Virus record (IMG/VR): IMGVR_UViG_3300005289_000052
Coordinates: 179,670 to 243,669 of that record
Direction: 5' to 3' (one strand)
Length of the DNA: 64,000 bases
Each line of letters starts with the position of its first letter. The first letter of the stretch is position 1. Made by a program: the position numbers and the translations under genes. The notes beneath the pieces were generated by a model. The model was not told the DNA's origin. It did not search any database and saw nothing but the letters and a program-made list of their open reading frames with translations. Positions 6,081-64,000 of the stretch are shown piece by piece.

Positions 6081-6124
6081 GGAAACGGGGAAGCCTTGCG
6101 GCCTCCCCGTTTCCCTTTATGCCG
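6079..6124. terminator. Terminator between convergent genes, with TTTATGCCG tail
   Basis: AGGGAAACGGGGA...TCCCCGTTTCCCT inverted repeat then TTATGCCG. Confidence 0.75.
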
Positions 6125-18196: not shown

Positions 18197-18327
18197 TGGC
18201 CCCGCTACCTGGATTCGAACCAGGGACCTCCCGACGGGCACGCGTGTTCAAACGTTCTCACCGCAGCGCGGCTATTAACGTAACCGCATGTCAGACGAGT
18301 GCTCTATACCAACTGAGCTATAGCCGG
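18197..18327 (-). ncRNA. tRNA-like RNA (GAC/Val-like) with a 53-nt insertion in the anticodon loop
   Basis: Canonical TAGCTCAGTTGGTATAGAGC D arm, CCTGG-TTCGAAT-CCAGG T arm, GCCA end; insert at 18236-18288. Confidence 0.75.
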
Positions 18328-19102: not shown

Positions 19103-19121
19103 GGTAATATACATCTGAAAG
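19103..19121 (-). promoter_or_regulatory. Early promoter
   Basis: CTTTCAGATGTATATTACC. Confidence 0.75.
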
Positions 19122-19178
19122 TTCTTTCAATCGACCCGAATAGGATGAGTGGGTTTTCTTTTATATGGGGTGTTCTTA

Positions 19179-19796
19179 ATGAACCGGTTACATCAATTGG
19201 TGGAGGAAGGGGAACTTTCTTATACCTACAGTCCTGAGGGCATAGACCTTCTGGATGCTGCGGGTGCCGAGGTACCCACTAAGGACATCTACATCTTGCT
19301 GACCGATACCAAAACTCTTGTGAGTAAGGTTAGTCGCATGGTGACTGGTGATCCGTACAACCATGTTTCCTTAATGCTCACCGATAACTTCGACGACGGG
19401 ATTTACACGTTCAGTCTGGGTAACGGGATCAATGGCATAAAAGGCGGCTTCATGGTTGAGGACCGTGCTAACCTGAAAGGGTCACGTTACTCGATGTATC
19501 GCCTGGGCGTCACACAGGGCGTGTACGACAAGATCAAAGCTCGGGTGACCGATTATGTCAATGGTGTAGAGAAGACCTCCTACAACCACCTGGGGCTGTT
19601 TAACGCCATCTTTAAGAAGAACATCTTCAAGTCAGAAGACGACCAGACCTCCATCTGTTCTGAGTTCGTGGTTGAAGTGCTAAAGTTCTCAGGCGTAGAA
19701 CTCTTTACCAAAAGATTCTCCAGCTCTGTAAGGCCTTACGAAATGATCAAGTCCAAGCTACTCAAGTTCCACAAGCGCGGCACCATCAAACCGTAA
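19179..19796 (+). CDS. Permuted papain-like (NlpC/P60, YiiX/YaeF C92-type) amidase/peptidase
   Basis: DIYILL, YNHVSL (His) N-terminal to SICSEFV (Cys); YNHLGL. Confidence 0.8.
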   Translation: MNRLHQLVEEGELSYTYSPEGIDLLDAAGAEVPTKDIYILLTDTKTLVSKVSRMVTGDPYNHVSLMLTDNFDDGIYTFSLGNGINGIKGGFMVEDRANLKGSRYSMYRLGVTQGVYDKIKARVTDYVNGVEKTSYNHLGLFNAIFKKNIFKSEDDQTSICSEFVVEVLKFSGVELFTKRFSSSVRPYEMIKSKLLKFHKRGTIKP

Positions 19797-19799
19797 CGT

Positions 19800-19842
19800 A
19801 GACCGGCTCACTTAGGTGGGTCGGTTTATGACGGCATAAAAG
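19800..19842. terminator. Terminator with back-to-back TTTATG(A/C)CG motifs
   Basis: ACCGGCTCAC-TTAG-GTGGGTCGGT TTATGACG overlapping CGGCATAAAA. Confidence 0.65.
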
Positions 19843-19854
19843 CTAAGCTCGAGG

Positions 19855-20377
19855 GAATCTCGACCCTACTCCCGATCGCCCACACCTTAGGGAGGTGGTG
19901 TGGCACGTCAGTTTCGCTGTGGAATCCCTGCGGCTTCGCTTTTATGTTTCTTACTTTCAGATAACGACGTAAGCTCGACGAGTCTAGGTTCAAGTTAGGG
20001 GTGCTCTCGAAGTCACCCAACGTAACCAACCCAGATCTGCCTCACGGTATCGCCCCGGTATCACACTGACACCATATCCTGACGCGGCTTTATCGGCTCG
20101 TCACTTTCAATACGACCACACGTCTACTGAAAGCGCATCCCGGTACCGATAACCGGTGCAACTCCCATGTCTACATGCCTTCGCAGTAGAAAGCGCAAGG
20201 GTCCTGATTGTTGTTTGCCGGAACTCCCCTCTGTGCCTGGCCACAAACTGATAACGAGCTGACGCATCAGTCCATGAAGTACGAATACTCGTACCAAGCT
20301 AAGAGTCCCCAACCAGAACCACATCTTCAACACATTCGTCACGGCGTTGCGCGTTGACCGTCGGATTCCCGAGATTC
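19855..20377 (-). ncRNA. Candidate large (~520 nt) structured ncRNA at the end of the PhuZ operon
   Basis: 5'/3' ends pair (GAATCTCGG/TCGAGATTC, then TCCGA/TCGGG); many hairpins with minus-strand G-U pairs; no credible ORF. Confidence 0.55.
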
Positions 20378-20397
20378 AATAATCGACTGGAGGTCTC

Positions 20398-20724
20398 CTA
20401 TACCTGACACATCCCTCGAACGTGTGGTAGTCGGATCACCGGTGCGGGACTCGCCCGCGCTGTCTTCTCATCGAACGCTGGCTCACCTAAGAGCCAAAGC
20501 ATCTCATCAACCCTGTTCCTCCAAAGATCACCTTGAAGAACCAGAGGCTCAGTGAACTGGTCAGTTCTACACCACAGACCAACTTCCTCAGCCTTAACGA
20601 GATGCGGGTTCCAGGAGCGCCAACGCTGATCGCTATCTTCGATAACTTCAACATTGTGCTCCAAGAATATCTGAGCAAGCAACGAACTCAACCCGAGACA
20701 GCCCCCAACAATGAGAACTCTCAA
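20398..20724 (-). CDS. Hypothetical protein with Rossmann-like N-terminal strand-loop-helix
   Basis: MRVLIVGGCLGLSSLLA; TTG start, AAGGA RBS. Confidence 0.55.
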   Translation of the reverse strand: MRVLIVGGCLGLSSLLAQIFLEHNVEVIEDSDQRWRSWNPHLVKAEEVGLWCRTDQFTEPLVLQGDLWRNRVDEMLWLLGEPAFDEKTARASPAPVIRLPHVRGMCQV

Positions 20725-20738
20725 ATGGTCGTCCTTAC

Positions 20739-20918
20739 TTAGCCCAAACCAATCCCCGAAGGACGGTTCTCAACCAGGTCTTGGTCGGGATCGTACTTCT
20801 TTTGAGGGTAAGGTTCGGCCCAAGGCTTTCCTTGACAACAGTCACAATGGAACGGCGTAGCGGGTGGTGCAGCCAACATCACGATGGTATTGCACTTATC
20901 GCAAGCGTACTCCCGCAT
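20739..20918 (-). CDS. 59-aa zinc-ribbon protein (not in ORF track)
   Basis: AGGAG RBS, MREYACDKCNT...FHCDCCQGK...GLG*; fills the gap directly after phuZ. Confidence 0.7.
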   Translation of the reverse strand: MREYACDKCNTIVMLAAPPATPFHCDCCQGKPWAEPYPQKKYDPDQDLVENRPSGIGLG

Positions 20919-20930
20919 GACGTTCTCCTT

Positions 20931-21896
20931 TTACAGAACCAGGAAGTCCTGGGTTGCAGCGTCTTTCTCGGTCACGAGGACTTTGGCAGAGCTGCGGCCT
21001 TCACGACGTTCCACGAATTGCTCGACCGTACGGTTAAGCGTGTCGTAAGATTGGCCAAGGAACTGCGTCGAAATGACGTAGTGCAGTTCGCTGACACCCT
21101 CGACCGGCGTCTGGAAGAAACCGGCGCAGGAGTATTCCGGCACTGGGCTTTGCAGTTGCGCTTGGTCGCGATCGGCGTACAGGCTTGCGATTGCGATTGG
21201 GTCCAGGATTTCCTTGACCTTCTCGGCGTCGCTGTAGATGTCCAGCAAGGCCAGTTGTGCTTCGACCGAAGTGGACTTGTTGAAACGCAGCCAGTGCAGA
21301 ACGTCCATGGTGTCCAGCTCGGCGTTCTGGCGGGAAGCCAGGTAGCGCAGGCAGGTGATGGCGAAGTGCAGTTGACCGTCGATGGTAGAACGCGTGGTGC
21401 CCTCGCCACTGTGGCGGTAGAAGGCAACGACCGGAACCTTGATACCGTTGGAGATCGCCGACAGCGACTTCAAGGTGTTCAGGCTGTTCTGTGCAGTGAT
21501 GGTGGACTCGGCGGAACCCGCACTGACCACGACCACAGCTTTGCCACGTTCCAGGAGTTCACGAACGATCAGCGGACCGATCACCGAACCCGAACCGCCC
21601 GAGGCGGAGAACACGACGATGTTGAAATCTTCTGGTGGCTGAGCCAACAGGATTTGCTTGATGCTGTCCGAGATGACCTGGTGGTTCTCGCGACGAACCT
21701 TACCGGAACCGTCAGTGCCTTCGAGCACGAAGATGGCTTCGGCTGGGATGGTGGTGTCCAGGTTGGAACGGCTGGTGTCTACGAAAGAGACCAGTGGGGT
21801 GGCGAAACCTGCGACTTCTTTCTGGCCGAGGTAACGTTTGGCGATGTTGTTGCCCAGACCGCCTGCACCGTAAATACGAACTTTGCCTTGAGACAT
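20931..21896 (-). CDS. phuZ: PhuZ phage tubulin
   Basis: GAGGLGNN, VDTSRSN, GSGKVR, ASGGSGSV tubulin signature, ELDTMD (T7 loop), acidic/hydrophobic C-tail. Confidence 0.95.
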   Translation of the reverse strand: MSQGKVRIYGAGGLGNNIAKRYLGQKEVAGFATPLVSFVDTSRSNLDTTIPAEAIFVLEGTDGSGKVRRENHQVISDSIKQILLAQPPEDFNIVVFSASGGSGSVIGPLIVRELLERGKAVVVVSAGSAESTITAQNSLNTLKSLSAISNGIKVPVVAFYRHSGEGTTRSTIDGQLHFAITCLRYLASRQNAELDTMDVLHWLRFNKSTSVEAQLALLDIYSDAEKVKEILDPIAIASLYADRDQAQLQSPVPEYSCAGFFQTPVEGVSELHYVISTQFLGQSYDTLNRTVEQFVERREGRSSAKVLVTEKDAATQDFLVL

Positions 21897-22311: not shown

Positions 22312-22519
22312 GTAGCAATTCCTCAATGATTTTCGCGTCAAGTGCGAATGCTTCTTTTGCAAAGAGGCGTATCATCGTGGCGTTTTGCTATCTGGGAAAC
22401 CCGAACAATCAGAGAGCTGCATGTTCTCTCAATTCATAACACCACGGAATCTTTTTTTACAGAAGCTTAGGAAACCCCGGTCATTCTATGACCCTAGGTC
22501 CAACTTCTCCGAGGTCATT

Positions 22520-23381: not shown

Positions 23382-24257
23382 TTAGGCCGCTAGTGAAGGT
23401 CTCGGTTTACGTTCTTTGCTGAACATAAACTCCATACGGGACTTAATGACCTGGTTAAAGTCGTAAGCTGGGAACGCACGGTCGTCATGAAACCACTTGA
23501 AAGAGTACCCGCCAATTTCAGTGATGTCCTTGTCTGCCAGTTTCTTGGCAATCAGCTCAGCGTCGATGCCAGTCATCAGGTAGGCACCCTGGATGGAGTG
23601 GCACACGATGGTGCGGTTATCACCGTGGTCAACGCAACGGATCTTGTCGCCGCCTTTCAAAGGCTTCTCTGGTGGGACGTGTTTCTTCGGAGTATGTTTG
23701 GCTACGAACTCTTCGCGAGGGTTCTTGGCCATTTGATGGACTACGTCCGGCAGGGTCAACTTAGCAGCCAGATCCTGTACCGTCATGTCCATAGCCGAAG
23801 CCGCTACCTGTAGCGAAGGGTAGATGAACATACGGCCGGTGTGTTTCTGACAGACCAGGATTTGAGCACGCCACGAAGAACCACTAGGCTTTTCACGAGC
23901 CGGTGCATCCATCGCTCTAGAAAGCTGGTGACTGATGGTGGGGTTCAGTGTATTGCTGTCTTCCCAGAATAGATTGGAAGCCTTGCAGTTTTCTGGGTTC
24001 ATGTCACGATGGCCAGTAATCCACATCTGGTTACCATCGCCCACGGGTGGCGGACCGTTAAACAATTCGTTTACCAGATCCCCTAAGTACATCTCGGGAC
24101 TCCCGTGCATCTGGAGCTTAAGATAGCCGTCTTCGTCATTGCGACATTGGATCATCCGCCAACGGTTACCCAAACCTTCTTTGCGCACTCGCGCATTACC
24201 CGCATCGCTAACTTCATATTTGCGATTCTCGGGTACTGGTTCCCATCTTTCAGTCAT
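23382..24257 (-). CDS. NUMOD4 / HNH homing-endonuclease-like protein with C-terminal NUMOD1-like repeats
   Basis: ERWEPVP...YEVSDAGNAR; GHRDMNPENCKASNLFW; YPSLQVAA and HSIQGAY repeats. Confidence 0.75.
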   Translation of the reverse strand: MTERWEPVPENRKYEVSDAGNARVRKEGLGNRWRMIQCRNDEDGYLKLQMHGSPEMYLGDLVNELFNGPPPVGDGNQMWITGHRDMNPENCKASNLFWEDSNTLNPTISHQLSRAMDAPAREKPSGSSWRAQILVCQKHTGRMFIYPSLQVAASAMDMTVQDLAAKLTLPDVVHQMAKNPREEFVAKHTPKKHVPPEKPLKGGDKIRCVDHGDNRTIVCHSIQGAYLMTGIDAELIAKKLADKDITEIGGYSFKWFHDDRAFPAYDFNQVIKSRMEFMFSKERKPRPSLAA

Positions 24258-25452: not shown

Positions 25453-25855
25453 TTCTAAGTTCTTCTGAGGGTAAGTGTTGGTTACTACATAGCCATAGCT
25501 TACTCTCTGTAAGTATTTATCCTAACCTTTTGAAATTTCCGGGAATTTTTTTAGTTTTTGTTTTTTCTCTCTTAGGGTCGCCAGTTGCACTAGTGGTCTT
25601 GTTGTACTCGCGTACAGACCACAGGTGCCTGCTCCCTAGGCTTAAGGTTCCCTCGCGGGAACAAAAGCCAGAATAGCATACGGAGTAGGCTATGCTACGC
25701 AGCCACTCACAAAGCAATATTGTTAAGCTTCGCTTTTGTTCTATTAAACCCCCCAAACCCCCCTTGACCTTCATTTCAAAACATCAACTATACTCGCAAA
25801 AGATAAGCTAGCTTAATTATCCAAATATTGCAACAGGGGGACGAACCCCCTGCAT

Positions 25856-45634: not shown

Positions 45635-45637
45635 CCT

Positions 45638-45865
45638 TTACATCCTTTTCTTAAATGTGTACACGATTACCAGCCCAACCGACAACACCACAACGTAAGC
45701 GATCTGTGCGATCTCGATACCATCACGGTGTCCTACCACACACTTCAAATAGATGGCCAACGCCACGTAAAGGATTGACGTTATGATCAAGAACCAAGCG
45801 GTCTTGCTCCAACCCTTAATGAAAGCCCAGAACTCTTTAAGAGCTTCCAAATTCTCTTTCCACAT
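45638..45865 (-). CDS. Small membrane protein (2 TM)
   Basis: GGAGGAG RBS; two hydrophobic stretches; basic C-terminus. Confidence 0.7.
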   Translation of the reverse strand: MWKENLEALKEFWAFIKGWSKTAWFLIITSILYVALAIYLKCVVGHRDGIEIAQIAYVVVLSVGLVIVYTFKKRM

Positions 45866-45917
45866 ATTCTCCTCCTGAGGATAAATAGATCTCTACAACT
45901 TTGTAGCTTATCCCTAA

Positions 45918-45936
45918 GGTAATATGTGTTTGAAAT
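45918..45936 (-). promoter_or_regulatory. Early promoter
   Basis: ATTTCAAACACATATTACC. Confidence 0.75.
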
Positions 45937-46011
45937 AGATTTAGATAGAATGCGATTTAAGCGGCATAAAAGCCCTAGGGGTATAACCCCTAGGGTCTTA
46001 TGACGATCGTA

Positions 46012-57074: not shown

Positions 57075-60000
57075 ATGGCTAAGGATCATAACGACATTGA
57101 TGACGATTTAGACAATTTTGACGACTTTGACTTCGGGGATGATTTCAATTTTGATACTCCTCCTCCGAAGGATGATCGCAAGCCAATTGTCAAGGTCGCC
57201 ACTTCGTTCCTGGCGGGGGCTGCCGAAGAGTTATCTGACCCTACTCGGGTTAAGAAGATGGCTCTTGACGCTCTCCCCGAGGGATACGGTAAAGCGGCTG
57301 GGATGGCCGATAAGGTAGCGTCAACTGGGCGCGAACTATACCATACGACCGCCGAAGAATTGAAGCCGGTGATTCGAGACGCCAAACGCTTAGGGCGTCG
57401 CGTTTTGCCGATGACAAAATCCTTTTTGCCCGAGAAACTGCAAAAGAAGTTTGAGGACATTGTCTCCGAAGAACCTAAGGGTCCGTCGGTAGAACAAACC
57501 CGTGATGCACTGATTAACTCAGAAGTCAGCGACATCTTTAAACTTCAGATGGAGGCTGATGCTCAGCAACGGGAAGAGGACAACATCCAAGACCAAGCTG
57601 AGCGTAAGCAAGACACCGCTCGGTTTAAGACTCAGATCGAAACGCTTAACTCGATCCTGTCTGGGGTTAACCGTCAGGTTGCATACCAAGACCAGATCCT
57701 GGCACGTTTCCAGAAGAAGAGTCTGGAACTGCAATACCTGCAATACTTCACCCTGCGTGATACCTACGAGTTGCAGAAAGCTGCTGCGAAGGACACGAAG
57801 ACCGCACTCCAAGACATCGTGAAGAACACGGGTCTGCCTGAATTCGTCAAGTCCAACTTGAGCGAACACGGTGGACATCTGTTCCGTGAACGTCTGCTTG
57901 GTGCAGCATCGTCGAAGGTGAGGGAGTACGGTGCCAAGTTCATTGACAAGTACGCTGGCAACATCAAAGACGCGATGAAGAAGAACGTTGGGGCATTTAA
58001 AGACGCCGCAATGAACGGTCTGACTTCGGCTGACATGTTGTTGGATGCTCGTCAAGGCATGCAAGATGCCGGTGAGTCTACTGATCCGTACACCAGTGGT
58101 GGTAAGTTTGCTGGTGGAATGATCGGTGGTGAACTGGGCGATCGGTTGGCTAAGTTCCTGCGCCCACACGTGGCCAAGATCCCAGGTGTTGCAAAGCTTG
58201 GGAACAAACTTGAATACGGTGCAGACAACCTTCCTGCCCTGATCTCTGATTGGGCGAAAGGAAACCAAGGTGAAGATACCAACTCACCGATGTGGAACAA
58301 GTTGCTACGAGGCTTTAAGGACCTAGCGCCTAAAGATGTCGTGGACAACAAACTTGGTGAGACAGACCTACTGCGTTCTCAAGACGCGGTGCCGTTTACT
58401 CATCTGGTCCGTAAGTCGATCACAGACATCATCCCAGGCTACCTCTCGCGGATTCACCATGAGTTGGCAATCCTGCGTACTGGTGACGCCAGTATCAAGC
58501 GGGTTGGGTATGACCTGAAAGATGGGTCATTTGCTTCCATGGATAAGATCACAAAGTCCATGGCGGGAAGTCTGTTCGATCAGACTAAGAACTTCGATGG
58601 GGTTAAGGATAAAACCAACGAACTCATTGACAAGATTGAAGAGAAGCACGGGGAGAAGCTTTCACCTACTCAACGTAAAGCGCTCTACAACAAGTTCATT
58701 GAAAAGGCTGCAAGTGGACAAGGCCGCTTCAACGTTAAGGAACTCTCTGACGTTGACACTTGGAAGGATCTGGATGATGACGATGCTCTGAAGCTTTCGT
58801 ACATGTTCAGTGACGACGTGGGTGAGGAGAACCAAAACCACTATTCAAAACAATTCCTGAAGATTCGGGATCACGTTAACAACCCTACGGATGCCATCAA
58901 GTCGATGGTCGATGCTGGGCAACTCGAACAGATGCGAGCGTTGGGTCTGATCACTGGCGAGGGTGAAAACCGTCGCATTGATCAGAAGCGTATCATCGAG
59001 ATCTTACAGCGAGGTGGATTCGGTGAGCCAACTGATGGCGGAACTGATTCTCCTGGTGGTACTCCTCGTAATCCTAACGGTGGTCCTAACGGTGGAAATC
59101 CTCTTGGCGGTCTTCGCGGCGCCAACGACAATCCTCAGGCTGCTCACTCGGACGCCGAAAAAGTAGCGACGCCCAAGAACCCTAACGAGTTCATGGAGAC
59201 CATTGGTGAGTACCAGATGTTGCTGTTGGAGGATATCCGTAAGGGTATCGCTAACCCGGCGGCGTTGGCGCAATATTCCGAAGCAGCACGCAATGATCCG
59301 AAGGCTACAGATGACGAGTGCACCTGTGTCGAGCGAATGATCAAAGCGTATCAGGAAGGCAACCAACAACTGGTTGATCAACTGACTGCTACCTACGAGC
59401 TGTTGATCTCTGGTCAACTGCAAACCATTTCGATGGGGGTTCCGTTTGACCCTGAGAAATTGGGGATGCGAACTTTAGGTGGTCATCTGGGTAAAGGTTT
59501 CGGGAAACTTAAGAACGCCGGTAAATGGGCGGGTGGTAAGTTCTCGAGTTACTACAAAGGTGCGATGAACCTCCAGAAGAACATTATCAAGGGTGGATTC
59601 AAAGGCGCTTGGGCTGGTGCCAAGGGTGCTGCGAATCTGATGTTTGGTCGGGCAAAAGGTAAGCTCAACGAGTGGGGCGACGTTTACGTCAAAGGTCAGT
59701 TCCGCCCAATCTTGACCTGGGCTCAACTCAAAGCCGGTGAATACCTCAACGAAGACGGTACGCCGATTACTTCGTGGAAGGACGTCAAAGGTCCAGTGAA
59801 GAACAAAGCAGGCGAGTACGTCTTAACTGCTGAGCAATTCGCACAAGGCTTGGTGGATGAAAAGGCTCGTCCTCTCTTCACCAAACTCAAGGACTTCGGC
59901 AAGGGGATGTTCAGCAAGATCAACAGCCTTTACACAGCACCGTTCAAAGCGATCAAGAACATGGTCTCTGGTGCGTGGAATGGACTGAAAGGTTTCGTTG

Positions 60001-63000
60001 AACGACCTCGTGACATGTACATCCCTGGCAACCCAGTGCCGGTACTGTTGGCCTCTGTAATGGCGGCTGGTGGATACCGTAACGCCGACGGGTCTCCGAT
60101 CACTAAGTGGACGGATATCAAAGGTACGGTGTATGACCTTGAGAACAACGTAGTAGTCTCTCTGGAGACGATGCGTCAAGGCTTGGTCGACATGGCAGGT
60201 AAGAAGTTCACGACTCTCAAGGGTGCTCTGTGGAGCGGTGCTAAATCCTTGGTGGGTGGTGCCTTCCGAATGGGTCGTCGTGCTATCGGTTCTGTCAAGA
60301 GCATGATGGGCAAAGGGTTCGGTGCTCTCAAGAAGGGTGCCGGTGGTTTGATGGGTATGGTCAAAGGTGGCCTCAAGAAAGCGGGAATCGGTGGAGGCGG
60401 TGGTTCTTCTGAGATGATGGAAGTCATCGGGGAATACCAAATCCTGCTGCTCGAAGAAATTCGGGATGGCATCCGTGACCTCAAACCTAAAACCATTCGT
60501 GGTGACATTGATGGTGACGGTATTCGTGAAGGTTCGTCACAGTGGTTGAGTGAACGCCGGAAGAAACGTCGTGAGGATCGAGAGGCTGCACAGAAAGCCA
60601 AAGACGATGCGCGTAACGGGAAGAAGGAAGAGAAGAAAGGTGGCCTGCTGGGTCTCATTACTCTGATCGCCGGTGGCGTGATGGGGATGGCGAAGAACCT
60701 GTTGTCTCTGCCTAAAGCTTTGTTCAGCATCGCTCGGAGTCTCAGTGCTGCAAAAGGCATTGGTGCTCTGGCTGACATCGCAGGTGGCATGGGTCGCGGT
60801 GGGCGTCTGGGTCGTATTGGACGCGGAGCTGCAACCGTAGGCCGTGGTGCTATGGCGGTGGGTGGTATGTTAGGTCGTACCGCTCTGGGTGTTGGTCGTC
60901 TGGCCTTTGGGGGCGTTGGTGGTATTGCTCGCGGTGCTTGGGCTTTAGGTTCAGCAGCCATTGGTGTACTCGGTGCTCCGTTGGTGCTCGGTGCTGCTGC
61001 GGTTGCCGCAGTAGGTTATCTGGCGTACAAAGGGTACAAGGCCTACAAGAAAGCCAAGAACTCCCACCTGGTCAAGTACCGGATGGCACAGTACGGTATT
61101 TCTTGGGACGACGAAGATCAAGTCAGCAAGGCTATGGAGTTGGAACTGATTGTGGCTCCGGCTGTACAGTTCAATTCCAACAACCCTCGCATTGATTGGA
61201 AGGCGGTGAAGGTAGACAAGATCAAGGAACTGTTTGGTCTCTCGGACGATGAGCCTGAGAAAACTGAACGCTTCGGCAAATGGTTCGAGACTCGTTTCGG
61301 TCCAGTCCTCATCAACCATCTGAAAATGCTTCAGAAGTATTCAACCAGCACCAAGCTGGAAGAAGCTGACGATGTAGTGAAGATGGAAGATAAGCTGAAG
61401 TACTTGGAAGGCGTTAAAGTTGACGACCCAGATACCACCTACGGTGATCTGACCAGTCCGTTTGACGATGACGATCTTTCGATGGGTCCTGCTCAAGTCC
61501 AAAAGGTGTGGGAAGAAGTTACTGCCGCCATCAAGGAGGACATGCCTGAGAAGGCTAAGGAATCCAAAGGTGAACAAGCTCAAACCGGCGCTAAGGAAGC
61601 TGCTGGTGCTGCGGCTGCTGCCGGTGCTCTGAAACAGAAAGGTTTCATGGATGGAATCAAAGACGGACTGGTTAACAGTACGTTGCTGGGTCGAGCGGCT
61701 AGTTGGCTCAACGAGAAAACGGGTGGTGCTATTGTCAAAGGGGCTTCGGCTATCTTTGGTGCGATGGCTGCTCCGTACGTTGGTGCATTCAACTGGATCA
61801 AGGAAAAGATCTTCGGTAAGGACTTCAAGGTTCCATCCATCTTGTCAGGTGAGATCGACCCTCTGACCAGTATCCGGTATCGTCTCTACGGTATCTACTC
61901 AATGGAGTACGCGCGTGTCTCGCCTATCTCCAAGCTGGAAGAGTTGTTGATTGATGACGTTAAGTATTCGGGTAGCGGTAAGGCTGAGTACGATGGTGAA
62001 CCTGGTGACATCTGGAAGAAGGTAGCAGGTAGCTTTACTGCAACGCCGGATTCCGATGAGGCCAAGGATCGCTGGATGCAGTGGTTCAGCAATCGTTTCC
62101 TGCCGGTGTATATCTCCTACCTGACGGCTGTACGTGGCTTCTCGAAGAACGGTAACCCGTTCGATGCGTACTCTCGTCTGCGTGCTGCACAGAGCCTTGA
62201 GATCGCTCGGTTTATGAACTCGGCTAACGCTGAGGAAGATTCCAAGTCTGAGAACAACCGTTCTGTGTGGGGAGTGACTGCTTCGCCGTTTGATGATTAT
62301 CCGCTCAACACGGATGCCAAGATCATTGAACCGTTCATCTCGGTGATTCAAGCCGATGCTAACAAGGAAGTATTGAACGAGAAGGTGAAGGTTGGTGCGG
62401 CTGCCAAAACTCAGGACATGATCAATCGTGCTCTGGGTACTAACAGCACTTCCGGTCCGTTGATGATGCGTCAGGACAACGGTAACGCAGCACAGTCAAA
62501 ACTGCCGGGTGGTCTGCTGAGTGCGATGTATGGCACGATGAAGACTGCGGGTGGTGACCCAGGCTACATGAATGGTGGCTTGCAGGTTCAACACCCAGGT
62601 AATGGTACTGGTGGTAGTGTCAACGACTTGCCTCAGGTCTCAGGAGCTGATGGAGAGTACTCGACCTACAAGGACATGATTGTAGCGGCATCGAGGATGG
62701 TCGGGGTTGACCCTGGCTTGATGGCAACCATGGCTGCCTTGGAGTCTAACTTCAAAGGTCGTGTGAAGTCTAAGTCCTCGTCTGCAACCGGCCTGTACCA
62801 GTTCATTGACGATACATGGAAAGCGATGTTGCTCAAGTACGGTCCGAAGTATGGACTGGACCCCAACACGCCTCCAACCGATCCACGTGCGAACGCCCTG
62901 TTGGGTGCTGAGTACATTCGTGAAAACACTGAGAAGCTGAAACAAGGTCTGGGTCGAGATCCAACGGACACCGACATCTACCTGGCTCACTTCTTCGGTC

Positions 63001-64000
63001 CTGCTGGTGCGCTCAAGTTCCTCTCCGCTAAGGGTGATGCGAACGCGGCGAGCATCATGCCAAAAGCTGCCAACGCCAACAAAGCGATCTTCTTCGCTGA
63101 CGGTCGTCCTCGGACTATCAGTCAGGTCTACGCTGAGGTCGACAGACGGGTTAAGGTCAAGCGTGACATGTACGCAGGGGATGCACGCAGTGCCATGGGT
63201 ATGGCTCCAGGTACAGCGAATACTCCAACCCCAGCTATCCCAGGCGTTACCTCATCTGCTGGTCTCGGAATGCCGCCTGCGGCTAACGAAGGCAGCGGTG
63301 GTGGTAGTGGTTCCATGGGTGCTGGTACTGTAGGGATCATGGCTCCTTCGGGTGCACCGTCTCCTACAGGCGTGGGTTCGGGTAGTGGTGGTAGTGATAC
63401 TGGTGCTCTCGGTGGTGGGATGTCTGTCCCAGGCATTACTCCGATGGGTGGTCAACCAGTCAGTGGCTCACAACAAGCACTGTCTACTAACACAACGCTT
63501 GCCGGTGGTAAAGATGCGGGTACGGTTATCCTGCAACGGGAGAAGTCGACTGATGGTGGTACGTTCGGTAAGTTGACCTTGCCTGACGGTACCTCGTACA
63601 ACACCTTGGAACTGGCTTGGCGTAACAACGAGTCAGGTAAGTCTTGCATTCCTCCGGGGACTTACAAAGTCGAGACGCGGAACTCTCCGAAGTTCGGTCC
63701 TGGCGTATACGAGGTGAAGAACGTACCTGGCCGTTCAGCGATCCTGATTCACTCCGGTAACTTTGCCGGTAACGTGGACAAGGGTCAAAAGTCGAACGTA
63801 CAAGGTTGCATCATGCTGGGCTTCTCACGCTCAGTACAAAGTGGCCAGCCGATGATCAACGAATCTAAGGCTGCAATGCAATCGTTCATGGAGAAGATGG
63901 GTGGACGTCCGTTCACCATGACTGTCGTGAGCGCAGAAGGAAGTACCGAGACTCCTCAAGGTACCCAAGGGGCTCCTGCTCAGGAGCAAAGTCAAGTATC
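57075..64000 (+). CDS. Tape-measure / virion lysin (phiKZ gp181-like), partial: SLT transglycosylase domain (~62660-63150) and DUF5675-like peptidase domain (~63520-63930)
   Basis: Manual translation from ATG 57075 (GGAG RBS; MAKDHNDIDDD...); same frame gives AALESNF...SATGLYQF...YLAHFFG and TLE...CIPPGTY...ILIHSGN...GCIMLG; absence from the ORF track fits no stop in window. Confidence 0.88.
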   Translation, partial: MAKDHNDIDDDLDNFDDFDFGDDFNFDTPPPKDDRKPIVKVATSFLAGAAEELSDPTRVKKMALDALPEGYGKAAGMADKVASTGRELYHTTAEELKPVIRDAKRLGRRVLPMTKSFLPEKLQKKFEDIVSEEPKGPSVEQTRDALINSEVSDIFKLQMEADAQQREEDNIQDQAERKQDTARFKTQIETLNSILSGVNRQVAYQDQILARFQKKSLELQYLQYFTLRDTYELQKAAAKDTKTALQDIVKNTGLPEFVKSNLSEHGGHLFRERLLGAASSKVREYGAKFIDKYAGNIKDAMKKNVGAFKDAAMNGLTSADMLLDARQGMQDAGESTDPYTSGGKFAGGMIGGELGDRLAKFLRPHVAKIPGVAKLGNKLEYGADNLPALISDWAKGNQGEDTNSPMWNKLLRGFKDLAPKDVVDNKLGETDLLRSQDAVPFTHLVRKSITDIIPGYLSRIHHELAILRTGDASIKRVGYDLKDGSFASMDKITKSMAGSLFDQTKNFDGVKDKTNELIDKIEEKHGEKLSPTQRKALYNKFIEKAASGQGRFNVKELSDVDTWKDLDDDDALKLSYMFSDDVGEENQNHYSKQFLKIRDHVNNPTDAIKSMVDAGQLEQMRALGLITGEGENRRIDQKRIIEILQRGGFGEPTDGGTDSPGGTPRNPNGGPNGGNPLGGLRGANDNPQAAHSDAEKVATPKNPNEFMETIGEYQMLLLEDIRKGIANPAALAQYSEAARNDPKATDDECTCVERMIKAYQEGNQQLVDQLTATYELLISGQLQTISMGVPFDPEKLGMRTLGGHLGKGFGKLKNAGKWAGGKFSSYYKGAMNLQKNIIKGGFKGAWAGAKGAANLMFGRAKGKLNEWGDVYVKGQFRPILTWAQLKAGEYLNEDGTPITSWKDVKGPVKNKAGEYVLTAEQFAQGLVDEKARPLFTKLKDFGKGMFSKINSLYTAPFKAIKNMVSGAWNGLKGFVERPRDMYIPGNPVPVLLASVMAAGGYRNADGSPITKWTDIKGTVYDLENNVVVSLETMRQGLVDMAGKKFTTLKGALWSGAKSLVGGAFRMGRRAIGSVKSMMGKGFGALKKGAGGLMGMVKGGLKKAGIGGGGGSSEMMEVIGEYQILLLEEIRDGIRDLKPKTIRGDIDGDGIREGSSQWLSERRKKRREDREAAQKAKDDARNGKKEEKKGGLLGLITLIAGGVMGMAKNLLSLPKALFSIARSLSAAKGIGALADIAGGMGRGGRLGRIGRGAATVGRGAMAVGGMLGRTALGVGRLAFGGVGGIARGAWALGSAAIGVLGAPLVLGAAAVAAVGYLAYKGYKAYKKAKNSHLVKYRMAQYGISWDDEDQVSKAMELELIVAPAVQFNSNNPRIDWKAVKVDKIKELFGLSDDEPEKTERFGKWFETRFGPVLINHLKMLQKYSTSTKLEEADDVVKMEDKLKYLEGVKVDDPDTTYGDLTSPFDDDDLSMGPAQVQKVWEEVTAAIKEDMPEKAKESKGEQAQTGAKEAAGAAAAAGALKQKGFMDGIKDGLVNSTLLGRAASWLNEKTGGAIVKGASAIFGAMAAPYVGAFNWIKEKIFGKDFKVPSILSGEIDPLTSIRYRLYGIYSMEYARVSPISKLEELLIDDVKYSGSGKAEYDGEPGDIWKKVAGSFTATPDSDEAKDRWMQWFSNRFLPVYISYLTAVRGFSKNGNPFDAYSRLRAAQSLEIARFMNSANAEEDSKSENNRSVWGVTASPFDDYPLNTDAKIIEPFISVIQADANKEVLNEKVKVGAAAKTQDMINRALGTNSTSGPLMMRQDNGNAAQSKLPGGLLSAMYGTMKTAGGDPGYMNGGLQVQHPGNGTGGSVNDLPQVSGADGEYSTYKDMIVAASRMVGVDPGLMATMAALESNFKGRVKSKSSSATGLYQFIDDTWKAMLLKYGPKYGLDPNTPPTDPRANALLGAEYIRENTEKLKQGLGRDPTDTDIYLAHFFGPAGALKFLSAKGDANAASIMPKAANANKAIFFADGRPRTISQVYAEVDRRVKVKRDMYAGDARSAMGMAPGTANTPTPAIPGVTSSAGLGMPPAANEGSGGGSGSMGAGTVGIMAPSGAPSPTGVGSGSGGSDTGALGGGMSVPGITPMGGQPVSGSQQALSTNTTLAGGKDAGTVILQREKSTDGGTFGKLTLPDGTSYNTLELAWRNNESGKSCIPPGTYKVETRNSPKFGPGVYEVKNVPGRSAILIHSGNFAGNVDKGQKSNVQGCIMLGFSRSVQSGQPMINESKAAMQSFMEKMGGRPFTMTVVSAEGSTETPQGTQGAPAQEQSQV

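What the first reader, a model, noticed from the sequence alone, without database searches (positions are those of the whole stretch)
19855..20377. ~520-nt end-paired structured RNA at the tail of the PhuZ operon
Seen: an ORF-poor gap in an otherwise dense region. Ends pair (20369-20377 with 19855-19863, continued by 20361-20365 with 19871-19875). Internal helices include CTTTCAGTAGAC/GTCGTATTGAAAG, TGACGAGCCG/CCGCGTCA, GTACGA/TCGTAC and CCACACC/GGTGTGG; mismatches resolve as G-U on the minus strand. It ends at TTTTATGCCG. Known: large phage ncRNAs such as ROOL and GOLLD are of this order of size and lack known function. Inference: a new large ncRNA co-expressed with the spindle gene.
Basis: partly seen in the sequence, partly recalled or inferred. 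Interest (0 to 1): 0.72.

Follow-up and report, generated by a model that had tools for sequence, protein, structure and literature searches.

The report
New large structured RNA after PhuZ
The roughly 600 bases after the tubulin (PhuZ) gene cluster of this uncultured jumbo phage encode a large folded non-coding RNA, not a protein; it matches no known RNA family and its function is unknown.

Summary
The ORF-poor gap is real, and it holds a conserved, structured RNA on the minus strand, the PhuZ strand. I collected 18 distinct versions (535-589 nt) from related uncultured jumbo phages.

- **Not coding.** The 72-aa ORF shows no codon periodicity, and its pN/pS equals the out-of-frame controls.
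- **Strongly conserved.** Within the second clade of relatives (clade B), the region changes 5-10 times more slowly than synonymous sites of the flanking genes.
- **5' domain (20189-20364).** It has 53 base pairs, 97% kept, and 15 show compensatory changes.
- **3' domain (19829-19950).** It has 24 pairs, 13 of them compensatory.
- **Strand.** G-U pairs and consensus folding energies favour the minus strand.
- **3' end.** The RNA ends at TTTATGCCGT. This is the genome's most over-represented 9-mer and the phiKZ-type terminator tail.
- **Transcription.** There is no such tail, and no early promoter, between PhuZ and the RNA. It is therefore most likely the 3' end of the PhuZ transcript.

The end-to-end pairing exists only in this phage and one near-identical relative. 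GTACGA/TCGTAC is replaced by a register-shifted hairpin.

Rfam, cultured phages and cellular genomes gave no homologue. There is no expression evidence, and function is unknown.

The parts
20402..20428 (-). Hairpin P0 (ACCACACGU / AUGUGUCAGGU). It overlaps the last codons of the 108-aa ORF and marks the start of the conserved block.
   Evidence: The last ~40 nt of an otherwise fast-evolving ORF are conserved: column entropy is 0.41 against about 1.0 upstream. The stem is kept as CACGU/ACGUG, CACGC/GCGUG or ACACGU/AUGUGU in relatives. Coordinates were checked.
20365..20401 (-). A+U-rich linker that contains the stop codon of the 108-aa ORF (20398-20400). It is not a canonical early promoter.
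   Evidence: Sequence varies between clades. The early-promoter matrix scores -14.6 here, against 37-54 for the 15 sites the matrix was built from. Relatives score -6 to -24 at this spot and 40-49 at their true promoters.
20189..20364 (-). 5' domain, 176 nt. It has two small 5' hairpins, then a long stem with a 9-nt asymmetric loop (GGCAAACAA, 20211-20219). The stem closes on a junction that carries a UUCG hairpin (20277-20290) and a 12-bp hairpin (20243-20275).
   Evidence: Covariance models R1 and R2 give 179-205 bits in 17 sequences and 123 bits in L047. 53 pairs are 97.4% paired, against 41-47% when partners are slid. 15 pairs show changes on both sides, against 2-6 when slid, and 0 of 500 shuffles reach the observed value. 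The genome has a single copy.
20057..20188 (-). Conserved half of the middle region. It holds hairpins M1 (20135-20159), M2 (CUUUCAG/UUGAAAG, 20104-20134) and M3 (20057-20073), and the invariant ACGAGC (20096-20101).
   Evidence: The two clades share the same architecture with different sequence: CUUUCAG/UUGAAAG against CUUCUGG/CUGGAAG against ACCUCU/AGAGGU, and GUGUC/GAUAC against GCCUC/GGGGC.
19951..20056 (-). Variable linker with clade-specific hairpins and length changes.
   Evidence: This is the highest-entropy part of the element (0.8-1.15). Indels of 20-30 nt occur between clades.
19829..19950 (-). 3' domain: one long irregular hairpin.
- Basal stem CAUAAAAGC/GCUUUUAUG, 19938-19946 with 19835-19843.
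- Second stem 19916-19934 with 19847-19869.
- Conserved internal loop GAAAC against GGAGUAGG.
- Variable apical hairpin 19881-19899.
- It ends in the terminator tail TTTATGCCGT (19831-19840).
   Evidence: Single-sequence MFE z-score is -3.99. Model R3 scores 105-133 bits on this strand against 23-24 on the other. 24 pairs are 96.6% paired against 29-48% slid, and 13 are compensatory against 1-5 slid. The tail is the genome's top 9-mer and follows G+C hairpins genome-wide. The phiKZ terminator motif ends in TTATKYYGT (PMC10914365).
19803..19835 (+). Terminator of the convergent 215-aa gene: a hairpin followed by TTTATGACGG. Its tail overlaps the tail of the minus-strand terminator.
   Evidence: The hairpin needs G-U pairs on the plus strand, and its stem covaries (CAC/GUG to CUC/GAG) in relatives.
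20124..20342 (-). 72-aa ORF inside the 5' domain. It is judged not to be a gene.
   Evidence: Column entropy by codon position is 0.50/0.49/0.47. For comparison PhuZ gives 0.45/0.31/0.83 and the 215-aa gene 0.33/0.20/0.88. pN/pS is 0.6-2.5 in frame and 0.35-1.75 out of frame. A -2/+5 indel pair shifts the frame between clades.
20398..21896 (-). Upstream genes of the same transcription unit: PhuZ (20931-21896), the zinc-ribbon ORF (20739-20918) and the 108-aa ORF (20398-20724).
   Evidence: PhuZ homologues in relatives carry Pfam Tubulin and TubZ_C_2, and tblastn finds PhuZ of cultured jumbo phages. The gene order is kept in all relatives.

Best explanation
**What it is.** The region encodes a roughly 600-nt, multi-domain structured non-coding RNA on the minus strand. 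It forms the 3' end of the transcription unit that carries PhuZ.

**Shown**
- The sequence is not protein-coding.
- It is conserved more strongly than the neighbouring genes.
- Its helices are kept by compensatory changes.
- It ends at the phage's own terminator signal. The terminator hairpin has been expanded into a conserved 115-nt irregular stem.

**Inferred**
- Transcription starts at the PhuZ-unit promoter, probably near 22430.
- It reads through PhuZ, the zinc-ribbon ORF and the 108-aa ORF into the RNA, and stops at 19831-19840.

**Likely role (inference only).** The folded 3' portion probably persists as a stable RNA, either attached to the mRNA or cut off in the A+U-rich linker. It would work through its invariant unpaired segments as a binding platform for a protein or RNA partner. 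Candidate segments are the asymmetric loop in the 5' domain, ACGAGC, and a GAA/AGUA internal loop in the terminal stem that resembles a sarcin-ricin (loop E) motif.
For: - **Not coding.** The 72-aa ORF has no codon periodicity. Its pN/pS equals the out-of-frame controls.
- **Purifying selection on the nucleotides.** Between two clade B relatives (L042 and L046), per-site difference in the 5' domain is 0.06-0.13. Synonymous sites of the flanking genes differ by 0.46-0.72.
- **Covariation.**
  - 5' domain: 15 of 53 pairs are compensatory and 97.4% of cells are paired.
  - 3' domain: 13 of 24 pairs are compensatory.
  - Whole element: 91% paired against 36-45% for slid partners, with 41 compensatory pairs against 15-23.
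- **Strand.** G-U pairs outnumber A-C pairs by 183:7, 177:27 and 42:12 in the three parts. Consensus energy is -237 against -183 kcal/mol. One hairpin carries a UUCG loop.
- **Terminator.** TTTATGCCG occurs 24 times, 13.5-fold over expectation, almost always right after a G+C hairpin. It matches the published phiKZ terminator motif.
- **No terminator or promoter in between.** No such tail lies on the minus strand between 23374 and 19833. No early promoter precedes the RNA.
- **Constant length.** The element is 535-589 nt in 18 distinct sequences.
Against: - There is no expression evidence. The only public runs that hold the sequence are unstranded assembler contigs flagged as probably DNA.
- Middle and late promoters of this phage could not be modelled, so the RNA may have a promoter of its own.
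- The 5' domain alone is not unusually stable (z = -1.0).
- All 18 sequences come from one clade with two main sub-clades, so many of the compensatory cells are inherited rather than independent events.
- The two CM-derived alignments are fitted to their models, which favours pairing.
- Whether the three parts belong to one molecule is inferred only from the lack of internal terminator tails.
- The proposed binding-platform role and the loop E reading rest on motif resemblance alone.
Confidence: 0.6

Rival explanations
1. It is a purely cis-acting 3' untranslated region. The folded RNA only protects the PhuZ-operon mRNA from 3' exonucleases. Its enlarged bidirectional terminator insulates the two convergent transcription units. 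It has no function in trans.
For: - It sits at the 3' end of the unit, between convergent genes.
- The 3' domain carries terminator tails on both strands.
- No promoter of its own was found.
- Sister lineages have unrelated sequence at the same place. That fits a role needing bulk structure rather than a specific sequence.
Against: - Other terminators in this genome do the job with an 8-12 bp hairpin.
- A stabiliser would not need 176 nt with 87% mean column identity (12 sequences) and invariant unpaired segments, evolving 5-10 times more slowly than synonymous sites.
- Cultured relatives RTH11 and LucasX have PhuZ without any such region.
Confidence: 0.22
2. It is an independent ncRNA gene with its own middle- or late-type promoter in the A+U-rich linker, transcribed separately from PhuZ.
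For: - The linker is A+U-rich.
- In some relatives it contains the core TATATTAC or TATAAT.
- Conservation begins just upstream of it.
Against: - The full early-promoter matrix scores the site at -6 to -24 in every relative, while true early promoters in the same loci score 40-49.
- In this phage the core is GTCGATTAT.
- Promoters of other classes could not be tested.
Confidence: 0.12
3. The conservation reflects the 72-aa ORF (20124-20342), or the antisense 49-aa ORF, encoding a small protein.
For: The frame carries at most one stop, near its 3' end, in all 18 sequences over this span, and gene callers sometimes call ORFs here.
Against: - There is no third-position excess.
- pN/pS is about 0.6-2.5, the same as the other two frames.
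- A frame-shifting indel pair separates the clades, and the C-terminal third is unrelated between them.
- Conservation continues unchanged outside the ORF on both sides.
Confidence: 0.03
4. It is a DNA-level site, such as a replication origin, a packaging site or a partition site for the PhuZ spindle, rather than an RNA.
For: It is a long conserved non-coding stretch next to the tubulin gene. Plasmid TubZ systems have centromere sites next to the operon (established knowledge).
Against: - Compensatory changes keep pairing that relies on G-U on one strand only.
- There are no iterated repeats of the centromere type in the alignments.
- The strand asymmetry of the folding energy is large.
Confidence: 0.03

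Closest known systems
ROOL and GOLLD large ornate RNAs of phages and prophages
   Same: - Phage-encoded and several hundred nucleotides long.
- Multi-domain, with a conserved part and a variable linker.
- Located near a tRNA island; here the 13-tRNA array starts about 1.5 kb downstream.
- No known function (PMC12286853).
   Different: - No match to either Rfam model, even at E up to 10.
- The secondary structure is unrelated.
- It sits at the 3' end of a protein operon and ends in the phage's terminator.
- It is known only from one clade of uncultured PhuZ-encoding jumbo phages.
- Self-assembly was not tested.
phiKZ-type intrinsic terminators (G+C hairpin followed by TTATKYYGT)
   Same: The element ends with TTATGCCGT. 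The reverse complement of the tail lies on the other side of the stem, as in this genome's bidirectional terminators.
   Different: The stem is about 115 nt long with conserved internal loops and a variable tip. Ordinary terminators here have an 8-12 bp hairpin with a tetraloop. This stem is conserved as a unit across 18 phages.
UTR-derived small RNAs of jumbo phages (for example 201phi2-1 sRNA005 and the phiKZ gp182 leader RNA)
   Same: Both are non-coding RNAs embedded in an mRNA unit of a phiKZ-like phage and are conserved by position among relatives (PMC11512511).
   Different: Those RNAs are under 250 nt, derive from 5' UTRs by premature termination, and lie upstream of a tail gene. This one is about 600 nt, lies in a 3' UTR and is next to PhuZ.

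Membership tests
ROOL (Rfam) | Match to the family covariance model at or near its gathering score | tested here: not met
   cmscan of the whole window at gathering thresholds found only tRNAs. A permissive scan of 19700-20950 at E up to 10 gave two chance hits outside the element.
GOLLD (Rfam) | Match to the family covariance model, including its conserved 3' half | tested here: not met
   The same scans found no hit.
Group I / group II introns, RNase P, tmRNA, 6S and other Rfam 15 families | Match to any of the 4227 covariance models | tested here: not met
   Searches found none. ARAGORN finds no tRNA or tmRNA in the element.
phiKZ-type intrinsic terminator | Tail TTATKYYGT directly after a stem-loop | tested here: met
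   TTATGCCGT at 19831-19839 follows the basal stem of the 3' domain.
phiKZ-type intrinsic terminator | Short G+C-rich hairpin (about 8-12 bp with a small loop) | tested here: not met
   The stem is a 115-nt irregular hairpin with an A+U-rich base.
Protein-coding gene (72-aa ORF) | Excess variation at third codon positions, and pN/pS well below the out-of-frame controls | tested here: not met
   Entropy by codon position is 0.50/0.49/0.47. pN/pS is 0.6-2.5 in frame and 0.35-1.75 out of frame. The 215-aa gene gives 0.16-0.29.
Structured non-coding RNA (general) | Base pairs kept by compensatory changes beyond slid-partner and shuffle controls | tested here: met
   tool counts; whole element.
Structured non-coding RNA (general) | A transcript of the predicted strand and ends is detected | not testable with these tools
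   Only unstranded Logan contigs were available, and the runs were flagged as probably DNA.
Early gene of this phage | Early promoter consensus (aatctcaag..TATATTACc..aGTGa) upstream | tested here: not met
   The matrix scores -14.6 at the element, against 37-54 for the sites it was built from. Relatives score -6 to -24.

The most novel reading that the evidence does not exclude
This is a new class of large phage RNA that acts in trans during nucleus-forming jumbo-phage infection. It could be a self-assembling RNA or a ribonucleoprotein scaffold or decoy made together with the PhuZ spindle. The slot after the PhuZ operon would then be a hotspot where unrelated large RNAs have replaced one another in sister lineages. 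Those lineages keep a 570-950 nt ORF-free gap there, with different sequence and a shared CCGAUUAAGUUCGG hairpin.
Probability: 0.15. Interest if true: 0.85.

Novelty: new member of a known kind. Interest (0 to 1): 0.62.

Why it matters
- **Rarity.** Bacterial and phage RNAs longer than 500 nt with well-supported structure are rare. The few known classes have either turned out to be unusual, like the ROOL and GOLLD cages, or remain unexplained.
- **New for this group.** To my knowledge and in the papers searched, this would be the first such RNA described for the nucleus-forming, tubulin-encoding jumbo phages. RNA biology there (export of mRNA from the phage nucleus, phage RNA polymerases, ribosome capture) is an open field.
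- **Ready to test.** The element now has a defined strand, ends, covariance models and 18 natural variants. It can be synthesised and probed directly, and searched for in new jumbo-phage isolates.
- **Terminator biology.** It also shows that the phiKZ-type terminator signal can be built onto a much larger conserved stem.

Tried and rejected
- **Rfam.** Scans at gathering and permissive thresholds found nothing in the element.
- **Cultured phages.** blastn of the region against 50,697 phage records found no match. The closest cultured phages (Xanthomonas phages RTH11 and LucasX, PhuZ 43% identical) are gene-dense after PhuZ and lack the element.
- **Cellular genomes.** The 80 fetched as loci were scored with R1, which reached at most 22 bits, so they are chance matches. 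The scan was incomplete.
- **More distant relatives.** R1, R2 and R3 found nothing significant in the loci of more distant relatives that were scanned (L021-L040, L048-L052, L181, L182), even with filters off on those tested that way.
- **Own early promoter.** The TATAAT/TATATTAC core in some relatives suggested one. The full position-weight matrix rejected it.
- **End-to-end closing helix.** Rejected, because it is not conserved.
- **Coding by the 72-aa ORF.** Rejected.
- **Public reads.** Only unstranded assembler contigs were served. One run holds a lone 200-nt contig identical to 20210-20404, which is suggestive but cannot be interpreted.
- **Neighbouring proteins.** Pfam and PHROG scans gave no functional context.
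- **Complex and structure prediction.** Not run. No candidate partner is specifically linked to the RNA, because the zinc-ribbon ORF also occurs in phages without it.

Full report
**Setting**

The window is the last 64 kb of a 243,669-bp viral contig from a metagenome, with direct terminal repeats. PhuZ is at 20931-21896 on the minus strand. Homologues in relatives carry Pfam Tubulin and TubZ_C_2. The nearest cultured phages are Xanthomonas jumbo phages with only 43% PhuZ identity.

Downstream on the same strand lie a 59-aa zinc-ribbon ORF (20739-20918) and a 108-aa ORF (20398-20724). Then come 601 nt without any sizeable ORF (19797-20397). After that is a convergent 215-aa gene (19149-19796, plus strand). 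A 13-tRNA array follows on the minus strand.

**Relatives**

Three routes gave loci with the same gene order:
- PhuZ searches of viral and metagenome contigs.
- A DNA-pattern scan.
- Look-ups of contigs encoding homologues of the 215-aa protein.

This yielded 18 distinct versions of the gap element, 535-589 nt long. They fall into clade A (this phage and four others), clade B (twelve) and one outlier (L047). Identity between the clades is about 62% overall and about 87% in the 5' domain.

**Not coding, but conserved**

In a 12-genome alignment, column entropy by codon position shows the expected third-position excess for the real genes:

| Region | Position 1 | Position 2 | Position 3 |
|---|---|---|---|
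| PhuZ | 0.45 | 0.31 | 0.83 |
| Zinc-ribbon ORF | 0.44 | 0.31 | 0.84 |
| 215-aa gene | 0.33 | 0.20 | 0.88 |
| 72-aa ORF in the gap | 0.50 | 0.49 | 0.47 |

The 72-aa ORF shows no such excess. Its pN/pS is 0.6-2.5, no different from the two other frames. The 215-aa gene gives 0.16-0.29. A -2/+5 indel pair shifts the frame between clades.

The region is nevertheless the best-conserved stretch in the neighbourhood. Between two clade B relatives (L042 and L046), per-site difference in the 5' domain is 0.06-0.13. Synonymous sites of the flanking genes differ by 0.46-0.72.

**Structure**

- **Whole element.** RNAalifold on 18 sequences gives -237 kcal/mol on the minus strand and -183 on the plus strand. 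It predicts 153 pairs, 91% of them paired, against 36-45% when partners are slid. 41 pairs have compensatory changes, against 15-23 when slid.
- **5' domain (20189-20364).** It was modelled separately (R1 and R2). In the 18 sequences, 53 pairs are 97.4% paired, against 41-47% slid. 15 pairs change on both sides, against 2-6 slid. The covariation score is 0.286 against 0.06-0.10, and 0 of 500 shuffles reach it. Some of these changes occur within clade B, for example the two inner pairs of the UUCG hairpin.
- **3' domain (19829-19950).** It is one long irregular hairpin. 24 modelled pairs are 96.6% paired, against 29-48% slid. 13 are compensatory, against 1-5 slid. Whole blocks of its interior have been swapped between lineages while pairing was kept.
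- **Middle region.** The first half has the same three hairpins in both clades with different sequences. The second half is a variable linker.
- **Strand.** G-U pairs outnumber A-C pairs by 183:7, 177:27 and 42:12 in the three parts. This count is biased by predicting the structure on that strand.

**The 3' end**

TTTATGCCG is the most over-represented 9-mer of the genome: 24 copies, 13.5-fold over expectation. Nearly every copy sits directly after a G+C-rich hairpin, often in back-to-back bidirectional pairs. This matches the published phiKZ terminator motif, which ends in TTATKYYGT (PMC10914365).

Here the stem in front of the tail is the whole 115-nt 3' domain. The reverse complement of the tail lies on its other side, so the domain is built like a bidirectional terminator with an enlarged, conserved stem. 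Its tail overlaps the tail of the plus-strand terminator of the 215-aa gene.

Its conserved internal loop (GAAAC opposite GGAGUAGG) contains the GAA/AGUA pair of strands typical of sarcin-ricin (loop E) motifs. That reading rests on my own knowledge and was not tested.

**Transcription**

No other tail of this type lies on the minus strand between 23374 and 19833.

The phage has a sharp early-promoter consensus, with about 21 sites, all on the minus strand. One at 19111 drives the next unit, the 132-aa gene and the tRNAs. The element's upstream linker scores -14.6 against that matrix. Relatives score -6 to -24 at the same spot, while their true promoters score 40-49.

The simplest reading is that the RNA is the 3' end of the unit carrying the 135-aa gene, PhuZ, the zinc-ribbon ORF and the 108-aa ORF. 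That unit probably starts at a TATG-type site near 22430 (inference). A promoter of another class in front of the RNA cannot be excluded.

**What could not be shown**

- **Expression.** The runs that hold the sequence are served only as unstranded assembler contigs and were flagged as probably DNA.
- **Function.** Neighbouring proteins have no informative domains.
- **Distribution.**
  - The family is absent from Rfam.
  - It is absent from 50,697 cultured-phage records.
  - It is absent from the cellular genomes sampled.
  - It is present once per genome.

The end-to-end closing helix is perfect only in this phage and in L016. It fails in the other 16 sequences, and both of its arms belong to conserved local helices. 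GTACGA/TCGTAC is replaced by a hairpin shifted by 3 nt.

**Verdict**

This is a real, new, large structured RNA at the tail of the PhuZ unit. How it works is open. I favour a stable RNA that binds a partner through its invariant loops. A purely cis-acting stabiliser and insulator role is the main rival.

Noticed in passing
window 18200-18327 (-): Rfam scores a tRNA here (44.9 bits), but the match spans 128 nt and ARAGORN does not call it. It may be a tRNA with an insert or intron at the head of the tRNA array.
   Followed up: no
window 19111 (-); also 4447, 4938, 12460, 24297, 29138, 44614, 45926: The genome has a sharp early-promoter consensus (aat.aaa.aaatctcaag..TATATTACc..aGTGa). There are about 21 sites, all on the minus strand. 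The one at 19111 drives the 132-aa gene and the tRNA array, and it is conserved in relatives.
   Followed up: yes
whole genome; window copies at 6117, 12560, 19833, 23374, 33101, 41465, 42781/42823, 45963: The terminator tail TTTATGCCGT follows G+C hairpins genome-wide and is often arranged as bidirectional pairs. The tail contains the TATG of phiKZ late promoters, so it may double as a restart site.
   Followed up: partly
L057:3657-4133 (-) and L048:4160-4639 (-): Two relatives carry an extra gene of about 158 aa, with its own ribosome-binding site, inserted directly after the element's terminator tail. It has no Pfam match. Its N-terminus reads KL(F/Y)HGS.
   Followed up: partly
L048:4640-5070, L181:1985-2555, L050:4113-4683, L051:4110-4990, L021 (PhuZ strand): Sister lineages keep an ORF-free gap of 570-950 nt at the same position, but with sequence unrelated to this element. 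L048, L181, L051 and L021 share the hairpin CCGAUUAAGUUCGG (L050 has a one-base variant), and all end in a TTTATGCC-type tail. This may be a second RNA family in the same slot.
   Followed up: partly
window 20398-20724 (-): The 108-aa ORF is kept open in all relatives but evolves very fast (pN/pS 0.5-0.85, entropy about 1.0). Only its last ~30 nt are conserved, and these belong to the RNA's first hairpin.
   Followed up: partly
window 20210-20404: One public run of a named organism (coded X16) holds a single 200-nt contig identical to just this part of the 5' domain and nothing else of the 3.4 kb laid. Several runs labelled RNA, from four other coded organisms, hold parts of the element.
   Followed up: no
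window 25453-25855, 45635-45999, 58352-59003, 59424-59822, 61320-61898, 63437-64000: These are further stretches of 350 nt or more without any ORF of 90 aa or longer in this dense genome. They were not examined.
   Followed up: no
window 23382-24257 (-): This 291-aa ORF lies next to the PhuZ unit. The gene at the corresponding position in relatives carries NUMOD4 and HNH_3 domains, so it is probably a homing endonuclease.
   Followed up: no
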